DNA of 64,000 bases from the NCBI RefSeq assembly GCF_006345805.1, contig NC_043017.1, positions 25,234,001 through 25,298,000 of the forward strand. The letters run 5' to 3'. Both the position numbers and the translations under genes were made by a program. The notes below the pieces were generated by a model. That model did no database searches and was not told the DNA's origin. It saw only the letters and a list, made by a program, of their open reading frames with translations. Shown in pieces: positions 1,556-60,984 of the stretch; the stretch's first letter is position 1, and each line of letters opens with the position of its first letter. Source of the DNA: Octopus sinensis. Taxonomy: Eukaryota.

Positions 1556-2165
1556 CCCTTTAGCATTTAAACCGGCCATATCTGACCAAAATATTCTCCC
1601 CTGTTTTATGTCCAAATTGGCCAGATCTGGCCTCTTACACCAACCCTACAATATTGTTTTAAAAATGAATAGTTACTTCATCAAAATCTCAAAGCTACAA
1701 GATAAATGCAGGATTCAGGAGTGGCTGTGTGGTAAGTAGCTTGCTAACCAACCACATGGTTCCGGGTTCAGTCCCACTGCGTGGCATCTTGGGCAAGTGT
1801 CTTCTGCTATAGCCCCGGGCCGACCAATGCCTTGTGAGTGGATTTGGTAGACGGAAACTGAAAGAAACCTGTTGTATATATGTATATATATATATATGTA
1901 TGTGTATGTGTGTTTGTGTGTCTGTGTTTGTCCCCCTAGCATTGCTTGACAACTGATGCTGGTGTGTTTACGTCCCCGTCACTTAGCGGTTCGGCAAAAG
2001 AGACCGATAGAATAAGTACTGGGCTTACAAAGAATAAGTCCCGGGGTCGATTTGCTCGACTAAAGGCGGTGCTCCAGCATGGCCGCAGTCAAATGACAGA
2101 AACAAGTAAAAGAGTAAAGAGTAAATAAGCATTACTTTTGATAGAATAATGCAAATACTAAATGG
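1556..2165. mobile_element. TTAA-flanked piggyBac-like MITE, interrupted by a SINE
   Basis: TTAA at 1552-1555 and 2166-2169; starts CCCTTTAGCATT, ends CTAAATGG. Same family at 25319, 52071 and 56296. Confidence 0.7.
1714..2125 (+). mobile_element. SINE family A (AGGAGTGGCTGTGTGGTAAG head, CCTTGGGCAAGT core, internal TA/TG microsatellite, AAGAGT tail)
   Basis: Full-length copy, nearly identical to the copies at 12440 (-) and 36108 (+); about 25 copies or fragments in the window. Confidence 0.85.
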
Positions 2166-9128: not shown

Positions 9129-9744
9129 TGAGAGATAGGCCTTATTATTATTATTATTATTCTGAATGTGATCTCTGCCCATTAACTTGCCTGCAATTGT
9201 TACTCTTGAGCTGTATGTGTGCAACAATTTATTTTTTTGCTCAAGCGCATAGGTAAAGTGTAAAGTTAGATGCAAGGGCCAAGATCTGTGAGGGTTAATC
9301 CTGTTATAGTTTTGTGGTGAACATTGTCTTATTTCTCACCTGTGGTATTTGAGATACTATGTATTGTCTTAACGATACATTATTATTGTCATTTGTTGAC
9401 TCTGTATAATCTGGTCACATCAACATAACATATCTTGACTTTCCAGTTTCTATACAATAGTTTATCAAAAGGCAGCCTGTTATCTGGGTAAACAGATTAA
9501 TAAGCAGGAACATATGGAGTTTGATTAAAATCAATCCCAGTTTTGTACTGAAGGCACCTGTGTCTTCTGTGGTAGCCTAGAGTTGACCATGTGAATCTTG
9601 TCTACTTGCTTTTCCTTAATGTATATATATATATAAGTTCAGCAAAATACTTACAGTGTTTAATAAAATGAAGTAGCATGAAACAATTGTACCACTCTAC
9701 CTTGGATATACTTGTTGCTTATTTTGATCATATATATATATATA

Positions 9745-10140
9745 TAGGCACAGGAGTGGCTGTGTGGTAAGTAGCTTGCTTACCAACCACATGGTTCAGG
9801 GTTCAGTCCCACTGCATGATACCTTGGGCAAGTGTCCCCTACTATAGCCTCGGGCCGACCAAAGCCTTGTGAGTGGATTTGGTAGACTGAAACTGAAAAG
9901 AAGCCAGTCGTATATACGTATATGTATGTATATGTGTGTGTGTGTGTGTGTTTGTCCCCCCAACATCACTTGACAACTGATGCTGGTGTGTTTACATCCC
10001 CGTAACTTAGCAGTTCGGCAAAACAGACCAACAGAATAAGTATTAGGCTTACAAAGAAAGTCCTGGGGTTGATTTGCTTGACTAAAGGCGGTACTCCAGC
10101 ATGACCGCAATCAAATGACTGAAACAAGTAAAAGAGTATA
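9745..10140 (+). mobile_element. SINE family A
   Basis: Full-length match to the 1714-2125 copy. Confidence 0.85.
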
Positions 10141-10939
10141 TATATATATACATACACATCATCATCATTTAATGTTTGCTCTCCATGCTAGCATGGGTTG
10201 GACTATTTGACAGGAGTTAACCAGCTGAAGAGCTGCCTGGGCTCCATTTTGTCTGTTTTGGCATGGTTTTGATGGCTGGATGCCCTTCCTAATGCCAACC
10301 ACTTTGCAAAGTGTACCGGGTGCTTTGAACATGACACCAGCATGGACGTTTTTATGTGACACCAGCATAGGTGCTTTTATGTGGCACCAGTACCATCAGC
10401 CCTCAGAACTATAGGACCTCTCAGCTGAGAGAGAGAGAGAGAGAGAGCTGCTCTATCGATTCAGGACAGTCTAAAATTATCCCATTGTTGTTATAAAAAT
10501 CCAATAAATGGACAAAACTTCTATAAATTGTTAGGTTGCTGAGGTGAAAGACCTGTGTGAGAAGTTTAACATTAGTGATTTAGGACGTGAATAAGAATTA
10601 ATTAGTTATCTGGAATAATTAAAATCACACTATCACCAAAAAAAATGCCCCAAAAACAGAAACAATTGAAAAGCAGTGACTGAAAAAAATTTATTTATAG
10701 AAAGGAGAGGGATTATTCTTTATGTGGCTGCTGCTTGATTTGCTAGAAACAGTAGCGAAATAAGCCCCTCAAATGTAACACAGCAATCTTGATAAAGGAA
10801 GTACACATTTGATAATGCCCGAGGGCTCTACCCCCCTCCCCCATTCTCAGGAATAGTGGGCAGAAAAAAATGGATAGATGAATAGATGCAGGAACAGCTA
10901 TGTGGTTAAGAAGTTTGCTTCCCGGTCACAGGGTTTCAG

Positions 10940-11378
10940 TCCCAATCAAAATCAATATCAAAATCGATCAACATCAATGGAAATTGTAGCTGTGATACCA
11001 GTGCCGGTGGCACATAGAGAACCATCCGAACGTGGCTGTTGCCAGCGCCGCCCCGACTGGCTTCCGTGCCGGTGGCACGTGAAAAACCACCATCCGATCG
11101 TGGCCGTTGCCAGCCTCGCCTGGCCTCCGTTCCGGTGGCACGTAAAAAGCACCATCCGATCGTGACCGTTTGCCAGCTTCGTCTGGCACCTGTGCCAGTG
11201 GCACATTAAAAGCACCCACTACACTCACAGAGTGGTTGGTGTTAGGTAGGGCATCCAGCCGTAGAAACATTGCCAGAGCAGACTGGGCCTGGTGCAGCCT
11301 TCTGGCTTCCCAGACCCCCAGTTGAACCGTCCAACCCATGCCAGCATGGAAAGCGGACGCTAAATGATGATGATGATG
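10940..11378 (+). mobile_element. RTE LINE 3'UTR inserted into a family A SINE
   Basis: The SINE is split at GTCCCA^CTGTGTGG; the insert carries VNTR units and a (GAT)n tail. Confidence 0.8.
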
Positions 11379-11389
11379 CTGTGTGGTAC

Positions 11390-11472
11390 TTTGGGCAAGT
11401 GCTTTCTGCTATAGGGTTTGACTAACCAAGGGTTTCTACAAGGGTTTGACTAACCAAGGGTTTCTACAAGGG
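11390..11472 (+). repeat. Upstream arm of an 83-bp inverted repeat bracketing the kinase exon
   Basis: 82/83 identity to the reverse complement of 13272-13354; contains a 28-bp tandem duplication seen nowhere else in the window. Confidence 0.9.
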
Positions 11473-11524
11473 CTTGACTAACCAAATCCTTGTGAGTGTA
11501 TCTGGAAGACAGAAACTGAAAGAA

Positions 11525-12249
11525 AGGCAGCGAGCTGGCAGAAACGTTAGCATGCTGGGCGAAATGCTTGGCGGTATTTCGTCTGCCGTTACGTTCTGAG
11601 TTCAAATTCCGCCAAGGTCCACTTTGCCTTTCATCCTTTCGGGGGTTGATAAATTAAGTACCAGTTACGCACTGGGGTCGATGTAATCCACATAATCTCC
11701 TTGTCTGTCCTTGTTTGTCCACTCTATGTTTAACCCCGTGCGGGCAATAAAGAAATAAGAAACTGAAAAAAACCTATTGTGTGTGTGTGCATGTGTGTGC
11801 TTGTGTATGGTGTACATACATGTGCTTATGTGTAATGTGTATTTGTATCTCCTTGCCTTGACATCACATGGTAGTTGTAAATGGTTATTACTAAAGGCGG
11901 TGAGCTGGCAGAAACGTTAGCATGCTGGGCAAAATGCTTAGCGGTATTTCGTCTGTCATTACGTTCTGAGTTCAAATTCCGCCGAGGTCGACTTTGCCTT
12001 TCATCCTTTCGGGAGTTGATAAATTAAGTACCAGTTATGCACTAGGGTCGATATAATCGACATAATCTCCTTGTTTGTCCCCTCTATGTTTAGCCCCTTG
12101 TATGCAATAAAGAAATAAGAAACTGAAAAAAACCCATTGTGTGTGTGCGCGCGCGCTTGCGTATGGTGTACATACGTGTGCTTATGCGTAGTGTGTATTT
12201 GTGTCTCCTTGCCTTGACACCACATGGTAGTTGTAAATGGTTATTACTG
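11525..12249 (+). repeat. Tandem duplication (about 365 bp x2) of a family B SINE plus flank
   Basis: 11525-11891 and 11893-12249 share the SINE (GCCTTTCATCCTTTCGGG..GATAAATTAAGTACCAG, Nin/Deu-like core), the variant ACATAATCTCCTTG, and the downstream flank ending GTAGTTGTAAATGGTTATTACT. Confidence 0.8.
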
Positions 12250-12439
12250 TCAAACAAGCAATGTTATTCATTTCCAATATTCTGTGAGGACATGACTGAT
12301 AATGGGAAAATATTCACCTTACTTGAAAACAGGCGAGGGTTGGTGACAGGAAGGCCATCCATCCATAGCCACGTGCCTCAATAAATTCCGTTTGACCCAT
12401 GCAAGCATGGCAAAGTGGACGCTAACATAACAACAATAC

Positions 12440-12835
12440 TCATTTACTCTTTTACTTGTTTCAGTCATTTGACTGCGGCCATGCTGGAGCACCGCCTCTT
12501 TTAGTCGAACAAATCGACCCCGGGACTTATTCTTTGCACAAGCCCAGTACTTATTCTATCGGTCTCTTTTGCCGAACCGCTAAGTGACGGGGACGTAAAC
12601 ACACCAGCATCGGTTGTCAAGCAATGCTAGGGGGACAAACACAGACACACAAACACACACACATACATATATACATATATATATACACATATACGACGGG
12701 CTTCTTTCGGTTTCCGTCTACCAAATCCACTCACAAGGCATTGGTCGGCCCGGGGCTATAGCAGAAGACACTTGCCCAAGATGCCACGCAGTGGGACTGA
12801 ACCCGGAACCATGTGGTTGGTTAGCAAGCTACTCC
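12440..12835 (-). mobile_element. SINE family A, young subfamily, just upstream of the kinase exon
   Basis: Reverse complement is nearly identical to 1714-2125. Confidence 0.85.
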
Positions 12836-12922
12836 TGCACCTATGATAATGAATTTTTTTTCTTTCTTCTCTGTTGGTCTGTCTCACCACTGAACATCTT
12901 TTGTTGCTTTTTTTTTTTCCAG

Positions 12923-13102
12923 ATTGTTGGTAAAGGAGCTTTTGGTGTGGTACGCCGTGCTACGTACCACAGGATTAATGTGGCTGTGAAACTCATCGAA
13001 ACTGAGTCGGAGAAGAAAGCATTCATTACAGAATTGAAACAATTGTCCCGAGTTTCTCACCCAAACATCGTTAAGCTGTATGGAGCTTGTACAAAACATC
13101 CG
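12923..13102 (+). CDS. MAP3K7: Internal coding exon of a TAK1/MAP3K7-like Ser/Thr kinase (subdomains I-IV)
   Basis: Translates to [60 protein letters not shown] (60 aa): GxGxxG loop, VAVK lysine, alphaC Glu, and the TAK1-typical ESEKKAF..[20 protein letters not shown]. Acceptor is poly-T + CCAG (AG at 12921-12922); donor GTTGGT at 13103. Phase 0/0, and as I recall the vertebrate TAK1 gene also has an intron after the equivalent Pro. Confidence 0.9.
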
Positions 13103-13271
13103 GTTGGTAATCCATGTTCTATGAAATCTTTTTCTGTTTTTTTTTTCATTTTGAATCTGTTTTTTTCTTTCTTTCTGAATGCTCTTAAGCCTTACTGAAT
13201 TTGCCACCCACTACATAATAATAATAATATAATAATAATAATAATAATATAATAATAACAACAGCAACAAA

Positions 13272-13354
13272 CCCTTGTAGAAACCCTTGGTTAGTCAAAC
13301 CCTTGTAGAAACCCTTGGTTAGTCAAACCCTATAGTAGAAAGCACTTGCCCAAA
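13272..13354 (-). repeat. Downstream arm of the 83-bp inverted repeat
   Basis: Reverse complement of 11390-11472, embedded in an (ATA)n/(ACA)n tract 170 nt after the exon donor. Confidence 0.9.
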
Positions 13355-14119
13355 TTATAATAATAATTTCAAATTTTTCCACAAGGGCAACAATTTTGGG
13401 GATGGGGTATGAGTCGATTACATTCACTGGTACTTATTTTATTGGCCCTGAAAGGATGAAGGGCAAAGTTTGAACTCGGAACGTAGTCACGTAATAATAT
13501 TAATAATAACAGGAGCACTCATAGAGTACAAACCTCCTCCAAGGCAATACCAATGTTCTCTCAATGATTTTTAAAATGAAAATATCTTAAATAAACTCGA
13601 CTGCTCTCACAAACGAGAATACTAAAAATGAACCGGAATGCTCTCAAAAAAATTAAGTAAAAGAGCAGGAAAAATAATCTAGAATCCTTGTCCGGTACCG
13701 GATTGATCCCAAAATCTAACCAGTTCATGTCAGTCACGAGACCAAACATCCCTGAAAGTTTCATCCGAATCCATCCATCTTAGTGCTCAGCTGGTTATTA
13801 TTTTATTGGCCTTTGAAGGATGAAAGACAATGGTGGAATTTGAACTCATAATGTAAGCATGGATGAAATGGTGCTAACCATTTTGACCACCGTGCTAAAG
13901 ATTCTGCTGGCTCGCTGCCCATGTTAGAAATGGTTGTTTAAAATTTAGACACCAGGCTGGAAATTCTATAGGCGTGGTTAAGTAGATTACACCAACCCCA
14001 ATGTGCAACTGGTACTTATTTTATCTACCCTGAGAGGATAAAAGGCAAAGCTGACCTCAGTGGAATTTGAACTGTGAACTCAGCGCAGTGGGACAGAAAA
14101 AATACTGCAAAGTATTTTG

Positions 14120-14894
14120 GGTGCTACTTTAGCATGCGGTCTACTACAGTATCCTACTTTAGCATGCAGTCTACTGCAGTATCCTACTTTAGCATGCAGT
14201 CTACTGCAGTATCCTACTTTAGTGTGCAGTCTACCGCAGTATCCTGTTTACACTGTGAAATTGCTTTTAGCGTGAGGTCTATCTTTCCTTACCCTCTAAA
14301 CCTGAGTTCATTTTAACCATTATAATGCTGTTAAAGGATTTCTATAGACGTATAATTTTTACAGAGGAAACAGCAGTTGCATTTTTACAAGAAAACAATC
14401 TTCTGGCTACATCGCAAGAAGCAGACCCTTGTCTTCGATGTAGTAGCATCATGCAAGAAAAGTGAAAACGTTACCGGGGTGGAGAATACCTATTTCTTTA
14501 TTACCCACAAGGGGCTAAACATAGAGGGGACAAACAAGGACAGACATAGGTATTAAGTCGATTACATCGACCCCAGTGCGTAACTGGTACTTAATTTATC
14601 GACCCCGAAAGGATGAAAGGCAAAGTCGACCTCAGCGGAATTTGAACTCACAACGTTGTGCCAGACGAAATACCGCTAAGCATTTTGCTCGGCACGCTAA
14701 CGTTTCTGCCAGCTCGCCACCTTATTCAGCATTATTCAGTTTGCTTTTATCATCCTGTCGTATAAAGTTCTTATAGTGGAGGCAGATTGCATGCTAAAGT
14801 GTAAAAGGTAGACTGCACGCTAAGAGTAATTTCACAGCGTAGACTGGATGCTGTGGTAGGCCACACGCTAAAGTAGCAATGCTGATGCTGCACC
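14120..14894 (+). mobile_element. Merlin (IS1595-like) DNA transposon remnant with repeat-containing TIRs
   Basis: GG-terminal inverted ends (GGTGCTACTTTAGCATGC... versus rc of ...CACGCTAAAGTAGCAATGCTGATGCTGCACC). Left end has four 30-bp units at 14124-14243. Internal FTEETAVAFLQENNLLATSQEADPCLRCSSIM resembles an ISXO2/Merlin transposase N-terminus with CxxC. The TSD is degenerate. Confidence 0.5.
14490..14722 (-). mobile_element. SINE family B inside the Merlin-like element
   Basis: Reverse complement of the GGCGAGCTGGCAGAAACGTTAG...GTGGGTAATAAAGAAATAG family. Other copies at 17362, 22615, 27600, 47920 (tandem dimer) and 56640. Confidence 0.8.
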
Positions 14895-15239
14895 AATTCT
14901 TTTAGCTTTCTGTCTTACCTATGTTAGAAATAATAATAATAATTATTATTAGTGCAGTAGGTGGCTTTAGACAAATAGGTTTTAGGTTTCACATGAAATA
15001 CCCTGTGGTATTCTGTTGTGTTGTTTTATGCTTTGAATTTAAATCCTATCCAAGTCAACTTAGATTTTCACTTCTAGTCCCAGAGTGGTAAATACCAATC
15101 AAGCACTGGTCATGTTTGACTGTACTTCAAGATTTGTGTCTGTGAAACTCAGAGCATCATGGTTTCACACACACATAGACACTATATATATATATATATA
15201 TATCTCAGCAGTCGCCATGATAGATCGTTAGCCACTACA

Positions 15240-15600
15240 CACATTTGGTGAAAGCAATCAGATCTGTGGAGTGCAAAGAATTGGGTTCTTCACAGTGACA
15301 ATGCACCCTGTGACCAAGCTCTGCCCACCTGTGAGTTTTTTGCATAAAAAAAAATGTCAAAATAAATGTTTCAACCATGAAACCCCAAACAGTTCTATTT
15401 CACTAGACTTATGGTTTACATTATAACATTATATATTTTTTTCTCTCCTTGTTTCTCTCCTTGTTTTTTCTGTGTACCTTTCTGTAGAAGAGCGTAGGCT
15501 CGAAACGTAAAAGACTTTTTCTATTCCTGAGTGTTATACTAATACATCTGTTTGCTTTGTACACCACCTGTCTTTGTCTTTTGTTTTTTTTATAAACTTT

Positions 15601-15610
<10 letters not shown>
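15240..15610 (+). repeat. Composite segment (mariner fragment + spacer + Penelope-like fragment), inverted copy of 28425-28790
   Basis: Mariner KNWVLHSDNAPC motif. Shared spacer CAGTTCTATTTCACTAGACTTATGGTTTACATTATAACATT. The GAAGAGCGTAGGCTCGAAACGTAAAAGAC segment resembles Penelope-like termini. Confidence 0.8.
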
Positions 15611-15646
<36 letters not shown>

Positions 15647-16287: not shown

Positions 16288-17992
16288 GTCGTGCAGTTAC
16301 TGTTTATACCTCGTTCAGAGATTTATTATTGCTTAAATAAATATATATATATGCATATATATATATATATATATATATAATACATGCATTTATATATATA
16401 TATTATATATATATATATAATAATATATATATGTTATATATTATATATTATATATATCTATACATACAGGTTATTCGTAAATGAATAAATAAATACAAAC
16501 GATGGATGGTTTAATACAATATGCATTTCTGGATTAGTCCAAGATCTAGTGATATACTCAGTAGGGTTCAGTTAATTGTATACACAACCTGAATATCCTT
16601 CTGCCTGTACTTTGGTACCAACACTTGTATTCATCTATATTTTAATTTTGACCGACCTGGTGCCCTACCATTTAAGTTCTTGAGTCACCTGAATCCTAAT
16701 ATATTATATATAGGTTTATCTGTGAATCATCATCATCATCATCGCTTAACGTCTGTTTCCCGTGCTAGCACGGGTTGGACGGTTCGACCGGGGTCTGGGA
16801 AGCCAGGGGCTGCTCCAGGCTCCAGTCTGATCTGGCAGAGTTTTTACGGCTGGATGCCCTTCCTAACGCCAACCACTCCGTGAGTGTAGTGGGTGCTTTT
16901 TACGTGCCACCCGCACAGGTGCCAGGGGGTGTCCGGCATCAGCCACGATCGGTTGGAACTTTTAACGTGCCAGCGGCACGGAAGCCAGCCAAGGCGGCGC
17001 TACCCTTGTCTAATCTGAATCTCCCCAAGAACTACGTTAAGGGTACACATGTCTGTGGAGCGCTCAGCCACTTGCACGTTAATTTCATGAGCAGGCTGTT
17101 CAGTTGATTGGATCAACTGGAACACTCGTCGTTGTAACTGATGGAGTGCCATGATACCTAATAACTGATCCAGTCAATGGTTCAATATCTAGAAGATGAA
17201 ATAGGCAGAACCAAAAATATAGTTCTAGACCAAATTACTTACTCGTAACATAACTTTGGCATTTAATATAAAAATTCTAATTTTTAGATCTATGTTCCAA
17301 GCTTTTGGCCATGACTGTATATGATAGGCTTCAGTTTTTGTCCAGTTTTTGGCCTGCGGCTATATATTTCTTTACTGCCCACAAGGGGCTAAACATAGAG
17401 GGGACAAACAAGGACAGACAAACGGATTAAGTCAATTACATCAACCCCAGTGCGAAACTGGTACTTAATATATCGACCCCGAAAGGATGAAAGGCAAAGT
17501 TGACCTCGGCGAAATTTGAACTCACAACGTAACGACAGACGAAATACCTATTTCTTTACTACCTGGCGCGCTAACGTGTCTGCCAGCTCGCCGCCTGCGG
17601 CTATATAGCAGACACCTGCCCATGGTGTTGTGCAGTAGGACTGAACCCAAAAACCATGTGTGGTTGGGTAGCAAACCTCCTTAATCACACAGTCACATAT
17701 GTGTCTAGTGTGCAGAATTAAAGTGTGACATGTATTCTCTTTATTGTCCACTCTAATTTTTCTATGCCTGTAATTTGCGGTAGTGGCTACATTTGAGGCA
17801 TAGAGAGCCAGATGTTACAGAACATGTGTAACTGGTTGTGTAACATGCAAAGGATGCAGTGTCACAGTCTTTTCTTCCAACTGTTCAGTTTATCTTTTTG
17901 ATCACAGGTAAGTTCATGGCCATCAATTCACTCTGAAGAAAGTTCATCATGAGGAAAGTTTACTGAGAAAATATATCCATAGTATCTCACTT

Positions 17993-59059: not shown

Positions 59060-59105
<46 letters not shown>

Positions 59106-60984
59106 TACGACGGGCTTCTTTCAGTTTCCGTCTACCAGATCCACTCACAAGGCTTTAGTCTCCCGAGGCTATCATAGAAGACACTTGCCCAAGGTGCCAC
59201 ACAGTGGAACTGAACCTGGAACCATGTCGTTCGTAAGCAAGCTACTTACCACACAGCCACTCCTACCTAATCTTTTTCTCTCAGTTCTTTTCTCTTTCCA
59301 AATTCCTACACATTAACATGTTGACTGCCACATGTGGTTCATCGCAAAATTCACACAAATGCCATATGCCTCACCAGTGGCACATTCCCATAATTTGAGA
59401 AAATATTTTCTTCTGTATCTTTGACATGGTTTCAAGAATATTTAAATAACATGAGTGCTAAGTTTTTAAGTTTAATTATGAAATATTGTAAAAATGCAAA
59501 AAAAAAAAAAAGCTATATCATGTCGTAATTAAATATCTGACCAGAAATATGTGGTCAATATTACACATCCAGCTGAGTCTGTTTGTATCATTTTGTTTAA
59601 TTCTTTACCATGTCTTCTGCAGTCAGTACCCATAATTTAACTCATATGCAATGTTGTACTTCATGGACAATCTTTCCTTTACATGGAAAGGATGAAATCC
59701 CTTTGTTGTCTGCAGAAGTAGGGATCTCTTTAAACTTTGCCACCTGTCCTTACTTGGCTACTCCCTCAGGTTTGAGAGCATGTCAAGCCATCTAACCCAT
59801 GCCTGCATGAAAAACAGATGTCAGACTCAGCTGGATGTGTAATATTAACCTGCTTACCACATATTTCTGGTCAGATATTTAATTACAACATAATATAATT
59901 TTTTTTTTTTGGCATTTCATAATTAATTTCATAATTAAACTTTAAAACTTAGTATTCATGTTATTTAAATATTCTTGAAACCATGTCAAAGATACAGAAG
60001 AAAATATTTTCTCAAATTATGGGAATGTGCCACTGGTGAGGCATATGGCATTTGTATGGAGTTTGCAATGAACCACCAGTGGTACATGTGGCAGTCAATA
60101 TGTTAATGTGTAGGAATTTGGAAAGAGAAAAGAACTGAGAGAAAAAGATTGGGTAGGAGTGGCTGTGTGGTAAGTAGCTTGCTTACAAATGACATGGTTC
60201 CAGGTTCAGTCCCACTGTGTTGCACCTTGGGCAAGTGTCTTCTACTATAGCCTCGGGTCGACCAAAGCCTTATGAATGGATTTGGTAGACGGAAACTGAA
60301 AGAAGCCCATCGTATATATGTATATATATGGCATTTAAATGGATTGTATCTAGTCCAAATAGTCTACTTGTTTTATGTTCAAACTGACCAGATCCAGTAT
60401 TGAGTTGGGTGGCTGGGTGCCATTTGATGAGAGGTGAAAAGAATGATGGGGGAACAGAGATAAGCATCTTGCTGTAGAAGAGATACAAGGATACTCCAGT
60501 TGGAAAAGAAGGGAGAGAAAGAGAGACTTAGAGAGAGAGAGAGAGACAGCGAGAGAGATTTGGTAGTGGATATATATGTCAGGAATTGTATGATCCTTGT
60601 CCTCTAATGGTTTCTCGACATCTTTGTGAATGATGTTTTTTGGTCAGAAGGGATTTGATTTGAATTATCAAACAGAAAACTAAGAGAAAAATTTCGTACC
60701 TTACGCCTCTCCGGGTCAACCTGCCCGGGTCTGTCCTGTTCAGAATTTTATGTAAACTTGTCATCTGTCTCACAAAGTTCAGCTTCATGAGATCAATCTT
60801 CGCCCCCATTTCCCATGTGTTCCTCTTCTGCAGGTTTCTTCATTTCGGGTCACATGATATTGCTGTACCCTGCTATTATCTTCCATACTCATCATGGAGT
60901 TTTGTCTTCTCCCTACTACATCACCTTCCTTGTATACTCTTTACTCTTTTACTTGTTACAGTCATTTGACTGTGGCCATACTGG
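58632..60984. repeat. Direct duplication (225 bp) enclosing an inverted duplication (about 500 bp arms)
   Basis: 58632-58856 matches 60760-60984 with about 5 mismatches. 59091-59581 is the inverse of 59822-60329, with a 240-bp spacer. Confidence 0.9.

What the first reader, a model, noticed from the sequence alone, without database searches (positions are those of the whole stretch)
11390..13354. Near-perfect 83-bp inverted repeat brackets the catalytic-core exon of the TAK1-like kinase
Seen: 11390-11472 and 13272-13354 are reverse complements at 82/83 positions. The one difference (G11408 versus T13336) would be a G-U wobble in + strand RNA. The sequence is a SINE fragment with a 28-bp tandem duplication seen in no other SINE copy in the window, and the downstream arm lacks the rest of the SINE, so it looks locally templated. 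Inverted family B SINE copies (11525/11893 versus 13370/14490) add pairing potential. Established: inverted repeats flanking an exon can promote back-splicing or skipping and are ADAR substrates, and coleoids edit RNA heavily. Inference: the 180-nt phase 0/0 exon could be looped out, giving an in-frame skip that lacks the Gly loop, the catalytic Lys and alphaC (kinase-dead), or a 180-nt circRNA.
Basis: partly seen in the sequence, partly recalled or inferred. Interest (0 to 1): 0.72.

Follow-up and report, generated by a model that had tools for sequence, protein, structure and literature searches.

The report
Inverted repeat bracketing octopus TAK1 exon
A 90-base piece of an old SINE in the intron before the ATP-binding exon of octopus TAK1 was copied, upside down, into the intron just after that exon; the copy is real and recent, but nothing here shows that it changes splicing.

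Summary
Bases 11390-11472 and 13272-13354 are reverse complements at 82/83 positions (87/90 over 11387-11476 / 13268-13357). This is the most perfect of 1288 inverted pairs of at least 50 nt in the window. The bracketed 180-nt exon (12923-13102) is coding exon 2 of octopus MAP3K7/TAK1. It is phase 0/0 and encodes the Gly loop, the catalytic Lys and alphaC.

The orthologous O. bimaculoides locus settles the origin. The upstream SINE copy is old and its sequence variant was found only at this locus. O. bimaculoides has one 28-bp unit where the window has two. The downstream arm is missing from the readable O. bimaculoides sequence. It carries the doubled unit and keeps the ancestral base at both sites where the arms differ. 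It is therefore a lineage-specific, locally templated inverted copy, inserted into an (AAT)n microsatellite.

The functional inference is untested and has weak prior support. The arm duplex (-163 kcal/mol) is the weakest of three mutually crossing long-range helices, so the family B SINEs compete with it rather than add to it. The exon is short for circularisation. Octopus circRNAs are few. No exon-skipped protein was found. The most likely outcome is an ordinary intronic dsRNA that ADAR edits.

The parts
1735..2123 (+). Full-length family A SINE in intron 1. It is the strongest pairing partner of the minus-strand family A SINE at 12438-12842.
   Evidence: 95% complementary over 397 nt. Duplex energy -749 kcal/mol with 382 bp.
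9770..10141 (+). Family A SINE in intron 1. It is the second pairing partner of the minus-strand family A SINE at 12438-12842.
   Evidence: 84% complementary over 393 nt. Duplex energy -574 kcal/mol. This helix replaces arm-arm pairing in the minimum-energy folds of 9700-13360 and 9700-14800.
10888..10944 (+). tRNA-like head of the old family A SINE copy that carries the upstream arm.
   Evidence: Window 10815-10938 is collinear with O. bimaculoides L008 16856-16978. In that species the SINE is uninterrupted.
10945..11378 (+). Nested repeat insertion (family C, with internal 63-bp tandem repeats and an (ATG)n tail). It splits the SINE head from the SINE body.
   Evidence: Absent from O. bimaculoides between 'ggtccca' and 'ctgtgtgg'. 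Tandem repeats found.
11379..11524 (+). Body of the old family A SINE copy, a sequence variant found only at this locus.
   Evidence: Orthologous to L008 16988-17108.
11387..11476 (+). Upstream arm of the inverted repeat. It is the template of the copy and now carries two derived substitutions, G11408 and C11473.
   Evidence: Polarity of the substitutions comes from the three-way alignment with O. bimaculoides.
11413..11485 (+). 28-bp minisatellite of 2.6 units. O. bimaculoides has 1.6 units.
11525..12250 (+). Family B SINE insertion at 11525-11759, flanked by a 12-bp target-site duplication, followed by a 370-bp tandem duplication of that SINE and its flank.
   Evidence: families D2, D5, D8. 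Both duplicated copies map to the same O. bimaculoides segment, 17095-17239.
12438..12842 (-). Family A SINE insertion that ends 80 nt upstream of the exon. It is specific to the window lineage.
   Evidence: L008 17428/17429 is continuous across the insertion site.
12923..13102 (+). MAP3K7/TAK1 coding exon 2: 60 codons, phase 0/0, encoding the Gly loop, the VAVK Lys and alphaC.
   Evidence: TAK1 structures match at E 4e-20, against 4.5e-7 for the next kinase. The peptide is 100% identical to O. vulgaris and O. sinensis MAP3K7 residues 17-76. The exon boundaries are the same in O. bimaculoides and in a more distant cephalopod.
13103..13108 (+). The exon's 5' splice site, GTTGGT, which is weak.
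   Evidence: The hexamer is GTTAGT in O. bimaculoides and GTAAGT in cephalopod contig L001.
13215..13267 (.). (ATA)n/(ACA)n microsatellite that received the copy.
   Evidence: The motif TAATAATAAT occurs on both sides of the insert.
13268..13357 (-). Downstream arm. It is an 87-nt inverted partial copy (13268-13354) of the upstream SINE body and starts 165 nt after the 5' splice site.
   Evidence: Once one 28-bp unit is removed, it is identical to the O. bimaculoides ortholog at every site. It is absent from the readable O. bimaculoides sequence at the orthologous position.
13358..13480 (-). 5'-truncated family B SINE. Its A/T-rich 3' tail abuts the downstream arm.
   Evidence: (family D3, pairs I5 and I6) and a direct reading.
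14491..14729 (-). Family B SINE that pairs across the exon with the plus-strand B copies at 11516-11757 and 11894-12117. It competes with the arm helix.
   Evidence: pairs I1-I3. A 219-bp helix of -368 kcal/mol. It replaces the arm helix in the minimum-energy fold of 11300-14800.

Best explanation
The inverted repeat is a real, evolutionarily recent sequence feature.

An old family A SINE sat in intron 1 of the octopus MAP3K7/TAK1 gene before the split from O. bimaculoides, and its sequence variant was seen only at this locus. In the lineage of the window (O. vulgaris / O. sinensis type), its internal 28-bp unit went from one full copy to two. Then an 87-nt stretch was copied in inverted orientation into an (AAT)n-type microsatellite in intron 2, 165 nt downstream of coding exon 2. 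That stretch runs from TTTGGGCAAG through both units to AGGGTTTG. Afterwards the upstream template picked up two substitutions.

The copying most likely happened at the DNA level, by a template switch during replication or break repair, primed on 2-3 nt of microhomology inside the microsatellite. This step is inferred.

In the pre-mRNA the two arms can form an 86-bp, nearly perfect duplex that closes a 1.8-kb loop around the exon. They have to compete with two larger SINE-SINE helices that cross them topologically.

The most likely consequence is the ordinary one for intronic inverted SINE pairs in a coleoid. The duplex forms transiently, ADAR edits it heavily, and it is removed with the introns. 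TAK1 splicing changes little or not at all. This step is also inferred.
For: Reality and uniqueness of the repeat:
- The arms match at 82/83 and 87/90 positions, the highest identity among 1288 inverted pairs in the window.
- The 28-bp unit occurs only in the two arms.

Origin:
- The O. bimaculoides ortholog (L008) has the upstream SINE intact, with GTGCTTTCTACTATAG and a single 28-bp unit.
- None of 13 family A motifs in 105 kb of O. bimaculoides, and none of the 20 other motifs in the window, carries the variant.
- Collinear homology with O. bimaculoides stops at window 13208 and resumes at 15620, with no arm in between.
- The downstream arm carries the derived doubled unit. It keeps the ancestral A and T where the upstream arm now has G11408 and C11473.
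- The insert has no SINE head, no SINE 3' end and no distinct target-site duplication. It is flanked on both sides by a TAA/ATT microsatellite.
- Germline templated insertions from nearby templates with 2-12 bp of junction microhomology are documented (PMC8421209).
- A second lineage-specific local inverted duplication lies in the same gene at 59.1-60.3 kb.

RNA level:
- The arm duplex has -163 kcal/mol. The arms pair with P = 0.99 when 11300-13450 is folded alone.
- They do not pair at all once the competing SINEs are included.

Priors against a splicing effect:
- Octopus editing is mostly in intronic and 3'UTR hairpins, circRNAs are few and lowly expressed, and ADAR antagonises back-splicing (PMC9699675).
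- Short exons circularise poorly, and stronger hairpins can inhibit circularisation (PMC4201285).
- No exon-2-skipped octopus protein was among database hits of up to 579 aa.
Against: - No RNA data were available, so editing, skipping and back-splicing remain untested.
- The genome-wide absence of the doubled-unit variant rests on only 35 SINE copies in 169 kb from two species.
- The O. bimaculoides sequence has a 262-N run inside the non-alignable block.
- The pre-insertion allele is unknown, so the junction microhomology cannot be proven, and an RNA-mediated copy is not excluded.
- Features that favour a splicing effect do exist. The 5' splice site is weak (GTTGGT). The downstream intron is longer than 50 kb. 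The duplex is far longer than the 30-40 nt that suffices for circularisation. Nested folding cannot model pseudoknots, so the competition argument is not decisive.
Confidence: 0.6

Rival explanations
1. The arm duplex loops out exon 2 and measurably promotes either in-frame skipping, which would give a kinase-dead and possibly dominant-negative TAK1, or a 180-nt circRNA. ADAR editing of the arms would tune the outcome.
For: - An 86-bp near-perfect duplex lies in the two introns that flank the exon. Inverted repeats of 30-40 nt are sufficient for circularisation in human cells (PMC4201285).
- Inverted intronic Alus can shift a constitutive exon to alternative splicing (PMC2533698).
- The exon is phase 0/0, and deleting the equivalent mouse exon gives a kinase-dead protein.
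- The 5' splice site is weak, GTTGGT.
- The downstream intron is longer than 50.9 kb, so the normal acceptor appears long after the duplex can form.
Against: - The arm helix is the weakest of three mutually crossing helices. The intron-1 helix between the family A SINE copies on opposite strands can form before the downstream arm is transcribed.
- The exon is 180 nt, and exons of 400 nt or less circularised poorly.
- Strengthened hairpins and G-U wobbles sometimes inhibited circularisation.
- Only 296 high-confidence circRNAs were found across octopus tissues, and MAP3K7 is not mentioned in the held supplements.
- No exon-skipped octopus isoform was among database proteins.
- Loss of TAK1 kinase function is lethal in mouse, so strong skipping would probably be selected against.
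Confidence: 0.15
2. The copy was made through RNA. A retrotransposon reverse transcriptase, priming on a microsatellite tail at the target, switched template onto an RNA containing the upstream SINE, for example the TAK1 pre-mRNA. It copied 87 nt before the insertion was resolved.
For: - In the SINE's own orientation, the fragment is followed by a (TTG)(TTA)n tract and sits next to the tail of a family B SINE.
- Other repeats in the window end in trinucleotide microsatellite tails.
- The fragment is truncated at its 5' end, as retrocopies often are.
Against: - The fragment also lacks the SINE's 3' 50 nt.
- No distinct target-site duplication can be told apart from the microsatellite.
- A second, larger local inverted duplication in the same intron includes non-SINE flank. 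It looks like a DNA-level event.
Confidence: 0.15
3. The downstream arm is an independent insertion from a dispersed, young SINE subfamily that carries the doubled 28-bp unit. Its nearness to the upstream copy would then be a coincidence.
For: The genome could not be searched. Only 35 family A copies were inspected, and the metagenome scans were uninformative.
Against: - The variant is found only at the orthologous locus in O. bimaculoides, and there with one unit.
- The doubling is derived at that locus.
- The arm lacks both ends of the SINE and has no target-site duplication.
- Apart from the extra unit, it is identical to the ancestral state of the neighbouring copy.
Confidence: 0.05
4. The downstream arm is an assembly artefact, such as a chimeric read or a collapsed palindrome.
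For: It lies inside a microsatellite, which is a difficult context for assembly.
Against: An artefact would copy the present upstream arm. Instead, the downstream arm differs from it at two sites, and at both it shows the base seen in O. bimaculoides.
Confidence: 0.02

Closest known systems
Inverted intronic repeats that flank circRNA-producing exons (inverted Alu pairs at ZKSCAN1, HIPK3 and EPHB4; the mouse Sry inverted repeats; Drosophila laccase2)
   Same: Reverse-complementary repeat fragments lie in the two introns that flank an exon. They are much longer than the 30-40 nt shown to be sufficient, and they sit within 1.5 kb and 0.17 kb of the splice sites.
   Different: - No back-splice evidence is available here.
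- The exon is only 180 nt.
- The arms are not two independent transposon insertions. One is a templated partial copy of the other.
- Stronger competing helices cross them.
Inverted intronic Alu pairs that shift a constitutive exon to alternative splicing (Lev-Maor et al. 2008, PMC2533698)
   Same: Intronic inverted SINEs form dsRNA close to an exon. The expected read-outs are editing and exon skipping.
   Different: In that study both Alus lay in the upstream intron. The closest counterpart in this window is the family A SINE pair (1735-2123 or 9770-10141 with 12438-12842), which ends 80 nt from the exon, rather than the arms.
Microhomology-mediated templated insertions (the MMBIR / FoSTeS class; PMC8421209)
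   Same: A short insert was copied from a nearby template in inverted orientation. Each junction has 2-3 nt of possible microhomology. Events of this class are known to persist as germline variants.
   Different: The template is 1.8 kb away, farther than the 100 bp or less of the yeast events. The junctions lie in a microsatellite, so the microhomology cannot be fixed without the empty allele.
Mouse Map3k7 exon 2 deletion allele (PMC3279403)
   Same: [quoted passage not shown] This gives a kinase-dead truncated TAK1.
   Different: That allele is an engineered DNA deletion. Natural skipping of this exon is not shown in octopus.
Intronic inverted-repeat substrates of ADAR hyper-editing
   Same: A long, near-perfect intramolecular dsRNA in a transcribed intron of a coleoid, where most editing falls in intronic and 3'UTR hairpins.
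   Different: Editing at these arms has not been observed. The duplex is shorter than typical SINE-SINE pairs, but it is far more perfect.

Membership tests
MAP3K7/TAK1 kinase exon | Best sequence match is to TAK1, and the exon contains the Gly loop GxGxxG, the VAxK Lys and alphaC. | tested here: met
   TAK1 chains in the PDB match at E 4e-20, against 4.5e-7 for the next kinase. The peptide is 100% identical to residues 17-76 of annotated O. vulgaris and O. sinensis MAP3K7.
MAP3K7/TAK1 kinase exon | Internal exon with conserved boundaries and phase 0/0. | tested here: met
   The AG and GT boundaries are the same in O. bimaculoides and in cephalopod contig L001. Exon 1 ends at ...KFEE and exon 3 starts at VCLVMEY.
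Intronic complementary sequences that drive back-splicing | Reverse-complementary sequences of at least 30-40 nt in both flanking introns. | tested here: met
   87/90 complementary, -163 kcal/mol.
Intronic complementary sequences that drive back-splicing | Pairing across the exon wins over pairing within one intron and over other crossing pairs. | tested here: not met
   No arm-arm pairs appear in the minimum-energy folds of 11300-14800, 9700-14800 and 9700-13360. The competitors have -368 to -749 kcal/mol. These are nested-structure models only, so pseudoknots are not represented.
Intronic complementary sequences that drive back-splicing | Back-splice junction reads, or an RNase R-resistant product. 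| not testable with these tools
   No RNA-seq access. MAP3K7 is not mentioned in the held supplements of the octopus circRNA survey.
Alternative cassette exon (skipping) | A transcript or protein that joins exon 1 directly to exon 3. | tested here: not met
   A search with the skipped-junction protein returned only the octopus cluster that includes the exon. The match began at V77, so it did not include the exon 1-exon 3 junction. This is a weak test, because the database is clustered and limited by protein length.
Microhomology-mediated templated insertion | The insert matches a nearby template and is absent from an outgroup. | tested here: met
   The template is 1.8 kb upstream and inverted. 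The insert is absent from the readable O. bimaculoides sequence at that position (a 262-N run remains unread), and it carries the doubled unit derived at the template locus.
Microhomology-mediated templated insertion | Microhomology at both junctions and no target-site duplication. | tested here: inconclusive
   TT(T) and TTG are shared at the junctions, but both lie in a trinucleotide microsatellite. The flanks share TAATAATAAT, so neither a target-site duplication nor true microhomology can be resolved.
Independent SINE retrotransposition (member of a subfamily) | An intact SINE 3' end or tail, plus a target-site duplication. | tested here: not met
   The arm stops inside the third 28-bp unit and lacks the 3' 50 nt. 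It also lacks the head.
Independent SINE retrotransposition (member of a subfamily) | Other dispersed copies share the diagnostic variant. | tested here: not met
   None of the 33 other family A copies in 169 kb from two species carries it. The whole genome was not searchable.
ADAR hyper-editing substrate | A long, near-perfect dsRNA within one transcript. | tested here: met
   86 bp with one G-U pair and one mismatch near the end. The duplexed 83 nt hold 20 and 26 adenosines.
ADAR hyper-editing substrate | Clustered A-to-G mismatches in RNA reads. | not testable with these tools
   No RNA-seq access.

The most novel reading that the evidence does not exclude
A locally templated inverted duplication, specific to the O. 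vulgaris / O. sinensis lineage, has turned the constitutive ATP-binding exon of TAK1 into a regulated loop-out exon. Arm pairing would yield an in-frame, kinase-dead and potentially dominant-negative TAK1, or a 180-nt circRNA. ADAR editing of the 86-bp duplex would set the ratio. O. bimaculoides, in which no downstream arm was found, would serve as a natural control.
Probability: 0.07. Interest if true: 0.7.

Novelty: new member of a known kind. Interest (0 to 1): 0.3.

Why it matters
Intronic inverted repeats that flank exons, and templated insertions, are both well known. In that sense the finding is ordinary.

What is unusual is how fully the history can be read from two genomes. The order of events is: an old SINE with a variant seen only at this locus, a 28-bp unit doubling, an inverted 87-nt copy placed across an essential kinase exon, and then two substitutions in the template. 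This gives a dated case of a genome creating an exon-bracketing dsRNA by local copying, not by two independent transposon insertions.

It also offers a natural experiment. O. bimaculoides shows no downstream arm and lacks the plus-strand family B SINEs and the exon-proximal family A SINE. Comparing TAK1 exon 2 splicing, circRNA output and intronic editing between the species would test directly whether such new duplexes have any effect in a heavily editing animal.

If skipping did occur, it would produce a kinase-dead form of a central innate-immunity and stress kinase.

Tried and rejected
- Genome-wide dispersal of the doubled-unit variant. A metagenome-contig scan for the unit junction found nothing, and so did the control scan for the generic SINE. 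That collection therefore holds no octopus DNA and the test is uninformative.
- Exact look-up of the window's 194-aa ORF that spans the exon: not on record.
- O. vulgaris and O. sinensis loci. The genes are on record, but their ranges (127 kb and 186 kb) are too long for DNA to be returned. The presence of the arms in each species, and the exact species of the window, could not be checked.
- First protein search, with the exon peptide alone. It returned only short ORFs. The tool appears to return proteins up to 1.75 times the query length. The nearest Logan contig (L001) is a distant cephalopod and useful only for the exon boundaries.
- Search for an exon-skipped isoform with a padded query carrying the skipped junction: no such octopus protein. 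This is a weak negative.
- Rfam on 9-16 kb: no family reached its gathering score.
- The supplements of the octopus circRNA survey hold no mention of MAP3K7 or TAK1.
- Considered and rejected: gene conversion between two old inverted SINE copies, because the flanks of the downstream arm show no SINE homology.
- Considered and rejected: a larger inverted segmental duplication covering arm plus family B SINE, because the order of the elements differs on the two sides.
- Considered and rejected: a cryptic-exon role for the G|GTTAGT motifs in the downstream arm. They would define only a 9-nt exon, or an extension of exon 2 that runs into an in-frame stop (reading).
Full report
**Observation.** Bases 11390-11472 and the reverse complement of 13272-13354 are identical at 82 of 83 positions. 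The only difference is G11408 against T13336, which would be a G-U pair in + strand RNA. With one more mismatch the match extends to 11387-11476 / 13268-13357, at 87/90 (pair I4). The 28-bp unit AGGGTTTGACTAACCAAGGGTTTCTACA occurs four times in 64 kb, twice in each arm, against 0 expected by chance. The window holds 22 copies of the family A SINE motif TTGGGCAAGTG..CTATAG. Only the two arms read GTGCTTTCT where the others read GTGTCTTCT, and only they carry the units. A self-BLAST found 1288 inverted pairs of at least 50 nt, with median identity 79% and a 99th percentile of 92%. The arm pair ranks first. It is also an outlier against the SINE-rich background.

**The exon.** The segment 12923-13102 translates to [63 protein letters not shown]1-TAB1 structures match it at E 4e-20, while the next kinases score 4.5e-7. 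It is 100% identical to residues 17-76 of the annotated MAP3K7 proteins of O. vulgaris (CAI9738199.1) and O. sinensis (XP_036367886.1). O. bimaculoides has one substitution, N to S. The window therefore comes from an O. vulgaris / O. sinensis-type genome.

In the O. bimaculoides locus (L008, CM046621.1), exon 1 encodes MDFVEEINFDDLKFEE. Exon 2 is the same 180 nt with the same AG and GT boundaries. Exon 3 (VCLVMEYAEGG...) lies 41 kb downstream. A more distant cephalopod contig has the same boundaries. The exon is thus phase 0/0, and skipping it would stay in frame and remove the Gly loop, the catalytic Lys and alphaC. [quoted passage not shown] Homozygous deletion is lethal (PMC3279403).

Exon 1 lies about 0.7 kb before the window start. 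Intron 1 is about 13.6 kb, and intron 2 is longer than 50.9 kb.

**Origin of the arms.** A collinear chain between the window and L008 shows that the upstream SINE is orthologous in both species. In O. bimaculoides (L008 16926-17108) it is an uninterrupted, full-length family A SINE. It reads ...TTTGGGCAAGTGCTTTCTACTATAGGGTTTGACTAACCAAGGGTTTCTACAAGGGTTTGAGTAACCAAACCCTTGTGAG... That is the same locus-specific variant, but with one full 28-bp unit instead of two. In 105 kb of O. bimaculoides the unit occurs only there, and none of the other 12 family A motifs has the variant.

The window lineage then added several things:
- a 434-bp nested insertion that splits the SINE head (about 10888-10944) from its body (11379-11524);
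- the extra 28-bp unit;
- a family B SINE at 11525-11759 with a 12-bp target-site duplication;
- a 370-bp tandem duplication of that SINE and its flank;
- a minus-strand family A SINE at 12438-12842, ending 80 nt from the exon.

Downstream of the exon, homology with O. bimaculoides ends at window 13208 and resumes at 15620. The O. bimaculoides segment in between is unrelated sequence plus a run of 262 N, and it contains no arm.

The downstream arm carries the doubled unit. When one unit is removed, it is identical to the O. bimaculoides ortholog at every site. The upstream arm differs at two sites, G11408 and C11473. The order of events is therefore: SINE insertion before the species split, unit doubling, an inverted 87-nt copy into intron 2, then two substitutions in the template.

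This polarity also argues against an assembly artefact, because an artefact would copy today's upstream arm. It argues against a dispersed subfamily as well. The arm lacks both SINE ends, and no separate target-site duplication can be told apart from the microsatellite.

The insert lies within an (ATA/ACA)n...(TAA)n tract, next to the tail of a truncated minus-strand family B SINE. Up to 3 nt, TT(T) and TTG, are shared at the junctions. I infer a microhomology-primed template switch at the DNA level, of the kind documented as germline templated insertions (PMC8421209). A template switch by a reverse transcriptase is a less likely alternative. A second lineage-specific local inverted duplication lies in the same intron. 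It spans 59091-59581 and 59822-60329, is 511 nt long at 90% identity, and includes non-SINE flank. O. bimaculoides has that sequence only once. Such events therefore recur here.

**RNA level.** The arm duplex has 86 bp and -163 kcal/mol. Folding 11300-13450 alone pairs the arms, with a mean in-register pair probability of 0.99. The wider context changes this. Three long-range helix sets cross one another topologically (order i<k<j<l along the RNA):

| Helix set | Position | Energy (kcal/mol) |
|---|---|---|
| Family A SINE, plus strand with minus strand | 1735-2123 or 9770-10141 with 12437-12833; wholly inside intron 1 | -749 / -574 |
| Family B SINE, plus strand with minus strand | 11516-11757 or 11894-12117 with 14491-14729; across the exon | -368 / -361 |
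| Arms | 11387-11476 with 13268-13357; across the exon | -163 |

In minimum-energy folds of 11300-14800, 9700-14800 and 9700-13360 the arms form no pairs with each other. They are alternative, stronger ways to bracket the exon, and they exclude the arm helix in any nested structure.

The family A helix lies inside intron 1 and can form before the downstream arm is transcribed. Such within-intron pairing is generally held to favour linear splicing (established knowledge, Zhang et al. 2014). Nested folding cannot model pseudoknots, so this is a caution and not a disproof.

**Function.** Several things favour an effect on splicing:
- Inverted repeats of 30-40 nt are enough to circularise an exon (PMC4201285).
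- Inverted Alus can make a constitutive exon alternative (PMC2533698).
- The 5' splice site is weak and has drifted from consensus: GTAAGT in L001, GTTAGT in O. bimaculoides, GTTGGT here.
- Intron 2 is very long.

Several things count against it:
- Exons of 400 nt or less circularised poorly, and stronger hairpins and G-U wobbles sometimes inhibited circularisation.
- An 18-tissue octopus survey found circRNAs at low levels, with only 296 of high confidence. It linked this to antagonism by ADAR. It also found that most editing falls in intronic and 3'UTR hairpins (PMC9699675).
- No exon-skipped octopus TAK1 protein was found among database hits (a weak test).
- Loss of TAK1 kinase function is lethal in mouse.

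My best reading is that the pair is one more intronic dsRNA and ADAR substrate with little effect on splicing.

**Verdict.**
- Observation: confirmed.
- Origin inference: supported, and strengthened by the outgroup.
- Functional inference: plausible in kind, untested, with low prior support.
- Novelty: a new member of known kinds (an exon-flanking intronic inverted repeat and a templated inverted insertion).
- Interest: modest. The value lies mainly in the clean evolutionary reconstruction and in the natural control that O. bimaculoides provides.

Noticed in passing
window 59091-59581 and 59822-60329: A second local inverted duplication in the same intron: 511 nt at 90% identity with a 241-nt spacer. 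It includes at least 34 nt of non-SINE flank. Window 59822-60155 matches O. bimaculoides L008 55087-54755 on the minus strand, and that sequence is present only once in O. bimaculoides. The pair would form a long hairpin in the pre-mRNA.
   Followed up: partly
window 1735-2123, 9770-10141 and 12438-12842: The minus-strand family A SINE that ends 80 nt upstream of exon 2 is specific to the window lineage. It is 95% and 84% complementary to two plus-strand copies in the same intron (-749 and -574 kcal/mol). This matches the known arrangement in which two inverted Alus in the upstream intron alter splicing of the next exon. It may matter more for exon 2 than the arms do.
   Followed up: partly
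window 13103-13108; L008 17685-17690; L001 575-580: The 5' splice site of exon 2 moves away from consensus across species: GTAAGT in a distant cephalopod, GTTAGT in O. bimaculoides, GTTGGT in the window.
   Followed up: partly
window 13288-13294 and 13316-13322: On the + strand the downstream arm carries two G|GTTAGT motifs. This is the same hexamer as the authentic exon 2 donor of O. bimaculoides. The arm also carries two TTGTAG| acceptor-like motifs.
   Followed up: no
window 11523-12250: A family B SINE insertion at 11525-11759, with the target-site duplication AAACTGAAAGAA / AAACTGAAAAAA, was followed by a 370-bp tandem duplication of the SINE plus flank (the two copies are 93% identical). 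Both are absent from O. bimaculoides.
   Followed up: partly
window 10945-11378 and 12340-12437: Another repeat family ends in ...CATGC(C/A)AGCATGG(C)AAAG(C/T)GGACGCTAA followed by a trinucleotide microsatellite tail, (ATG)n or (ATA/ACA)n. The copy at 10945-11378 has internal 63-bp tandem repeats at 11001-11216.
   Followed up: no
window 14124-14245: A 30-bp tandem repeat of 4.1 copies at 94% identity, inside the lineage-specific block 13209-15619.
   Followed up: no
L008 17820-18316: At the position of the window's lineage-specific block, O. bimaculoides has its own unrelated insert. It consists of about three copies of a roughly 61-bp tandem repeat, then what looks by eye like a retrotransposon-derived fragment (not checked with any tool), then 262 N. 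This part of intron 2 has turned over independently in both lineages.
   Followed up: partly
proteins P0087, P0192, P0193 (O. vulgaris, O. sinensis, O. bimaculoides MAP3K7 models): The annotated octopus MAP3K7 models are only 262-303 aa long and differ from one another after 'MWAVHQG'. The O. bimaculoides model reads through into intron there. The gene spans 85-186 kb. No full-length model was seen.
   Followed up: no
tool behaviour: the search for homologous proteins returned no protein longer than about 1.75 times the query length (105 aa for a 60-aa query, 441 for 252, 580 for 331). Short queries therefore miss full-length eukaryotic proteins.
   Followed up: yes
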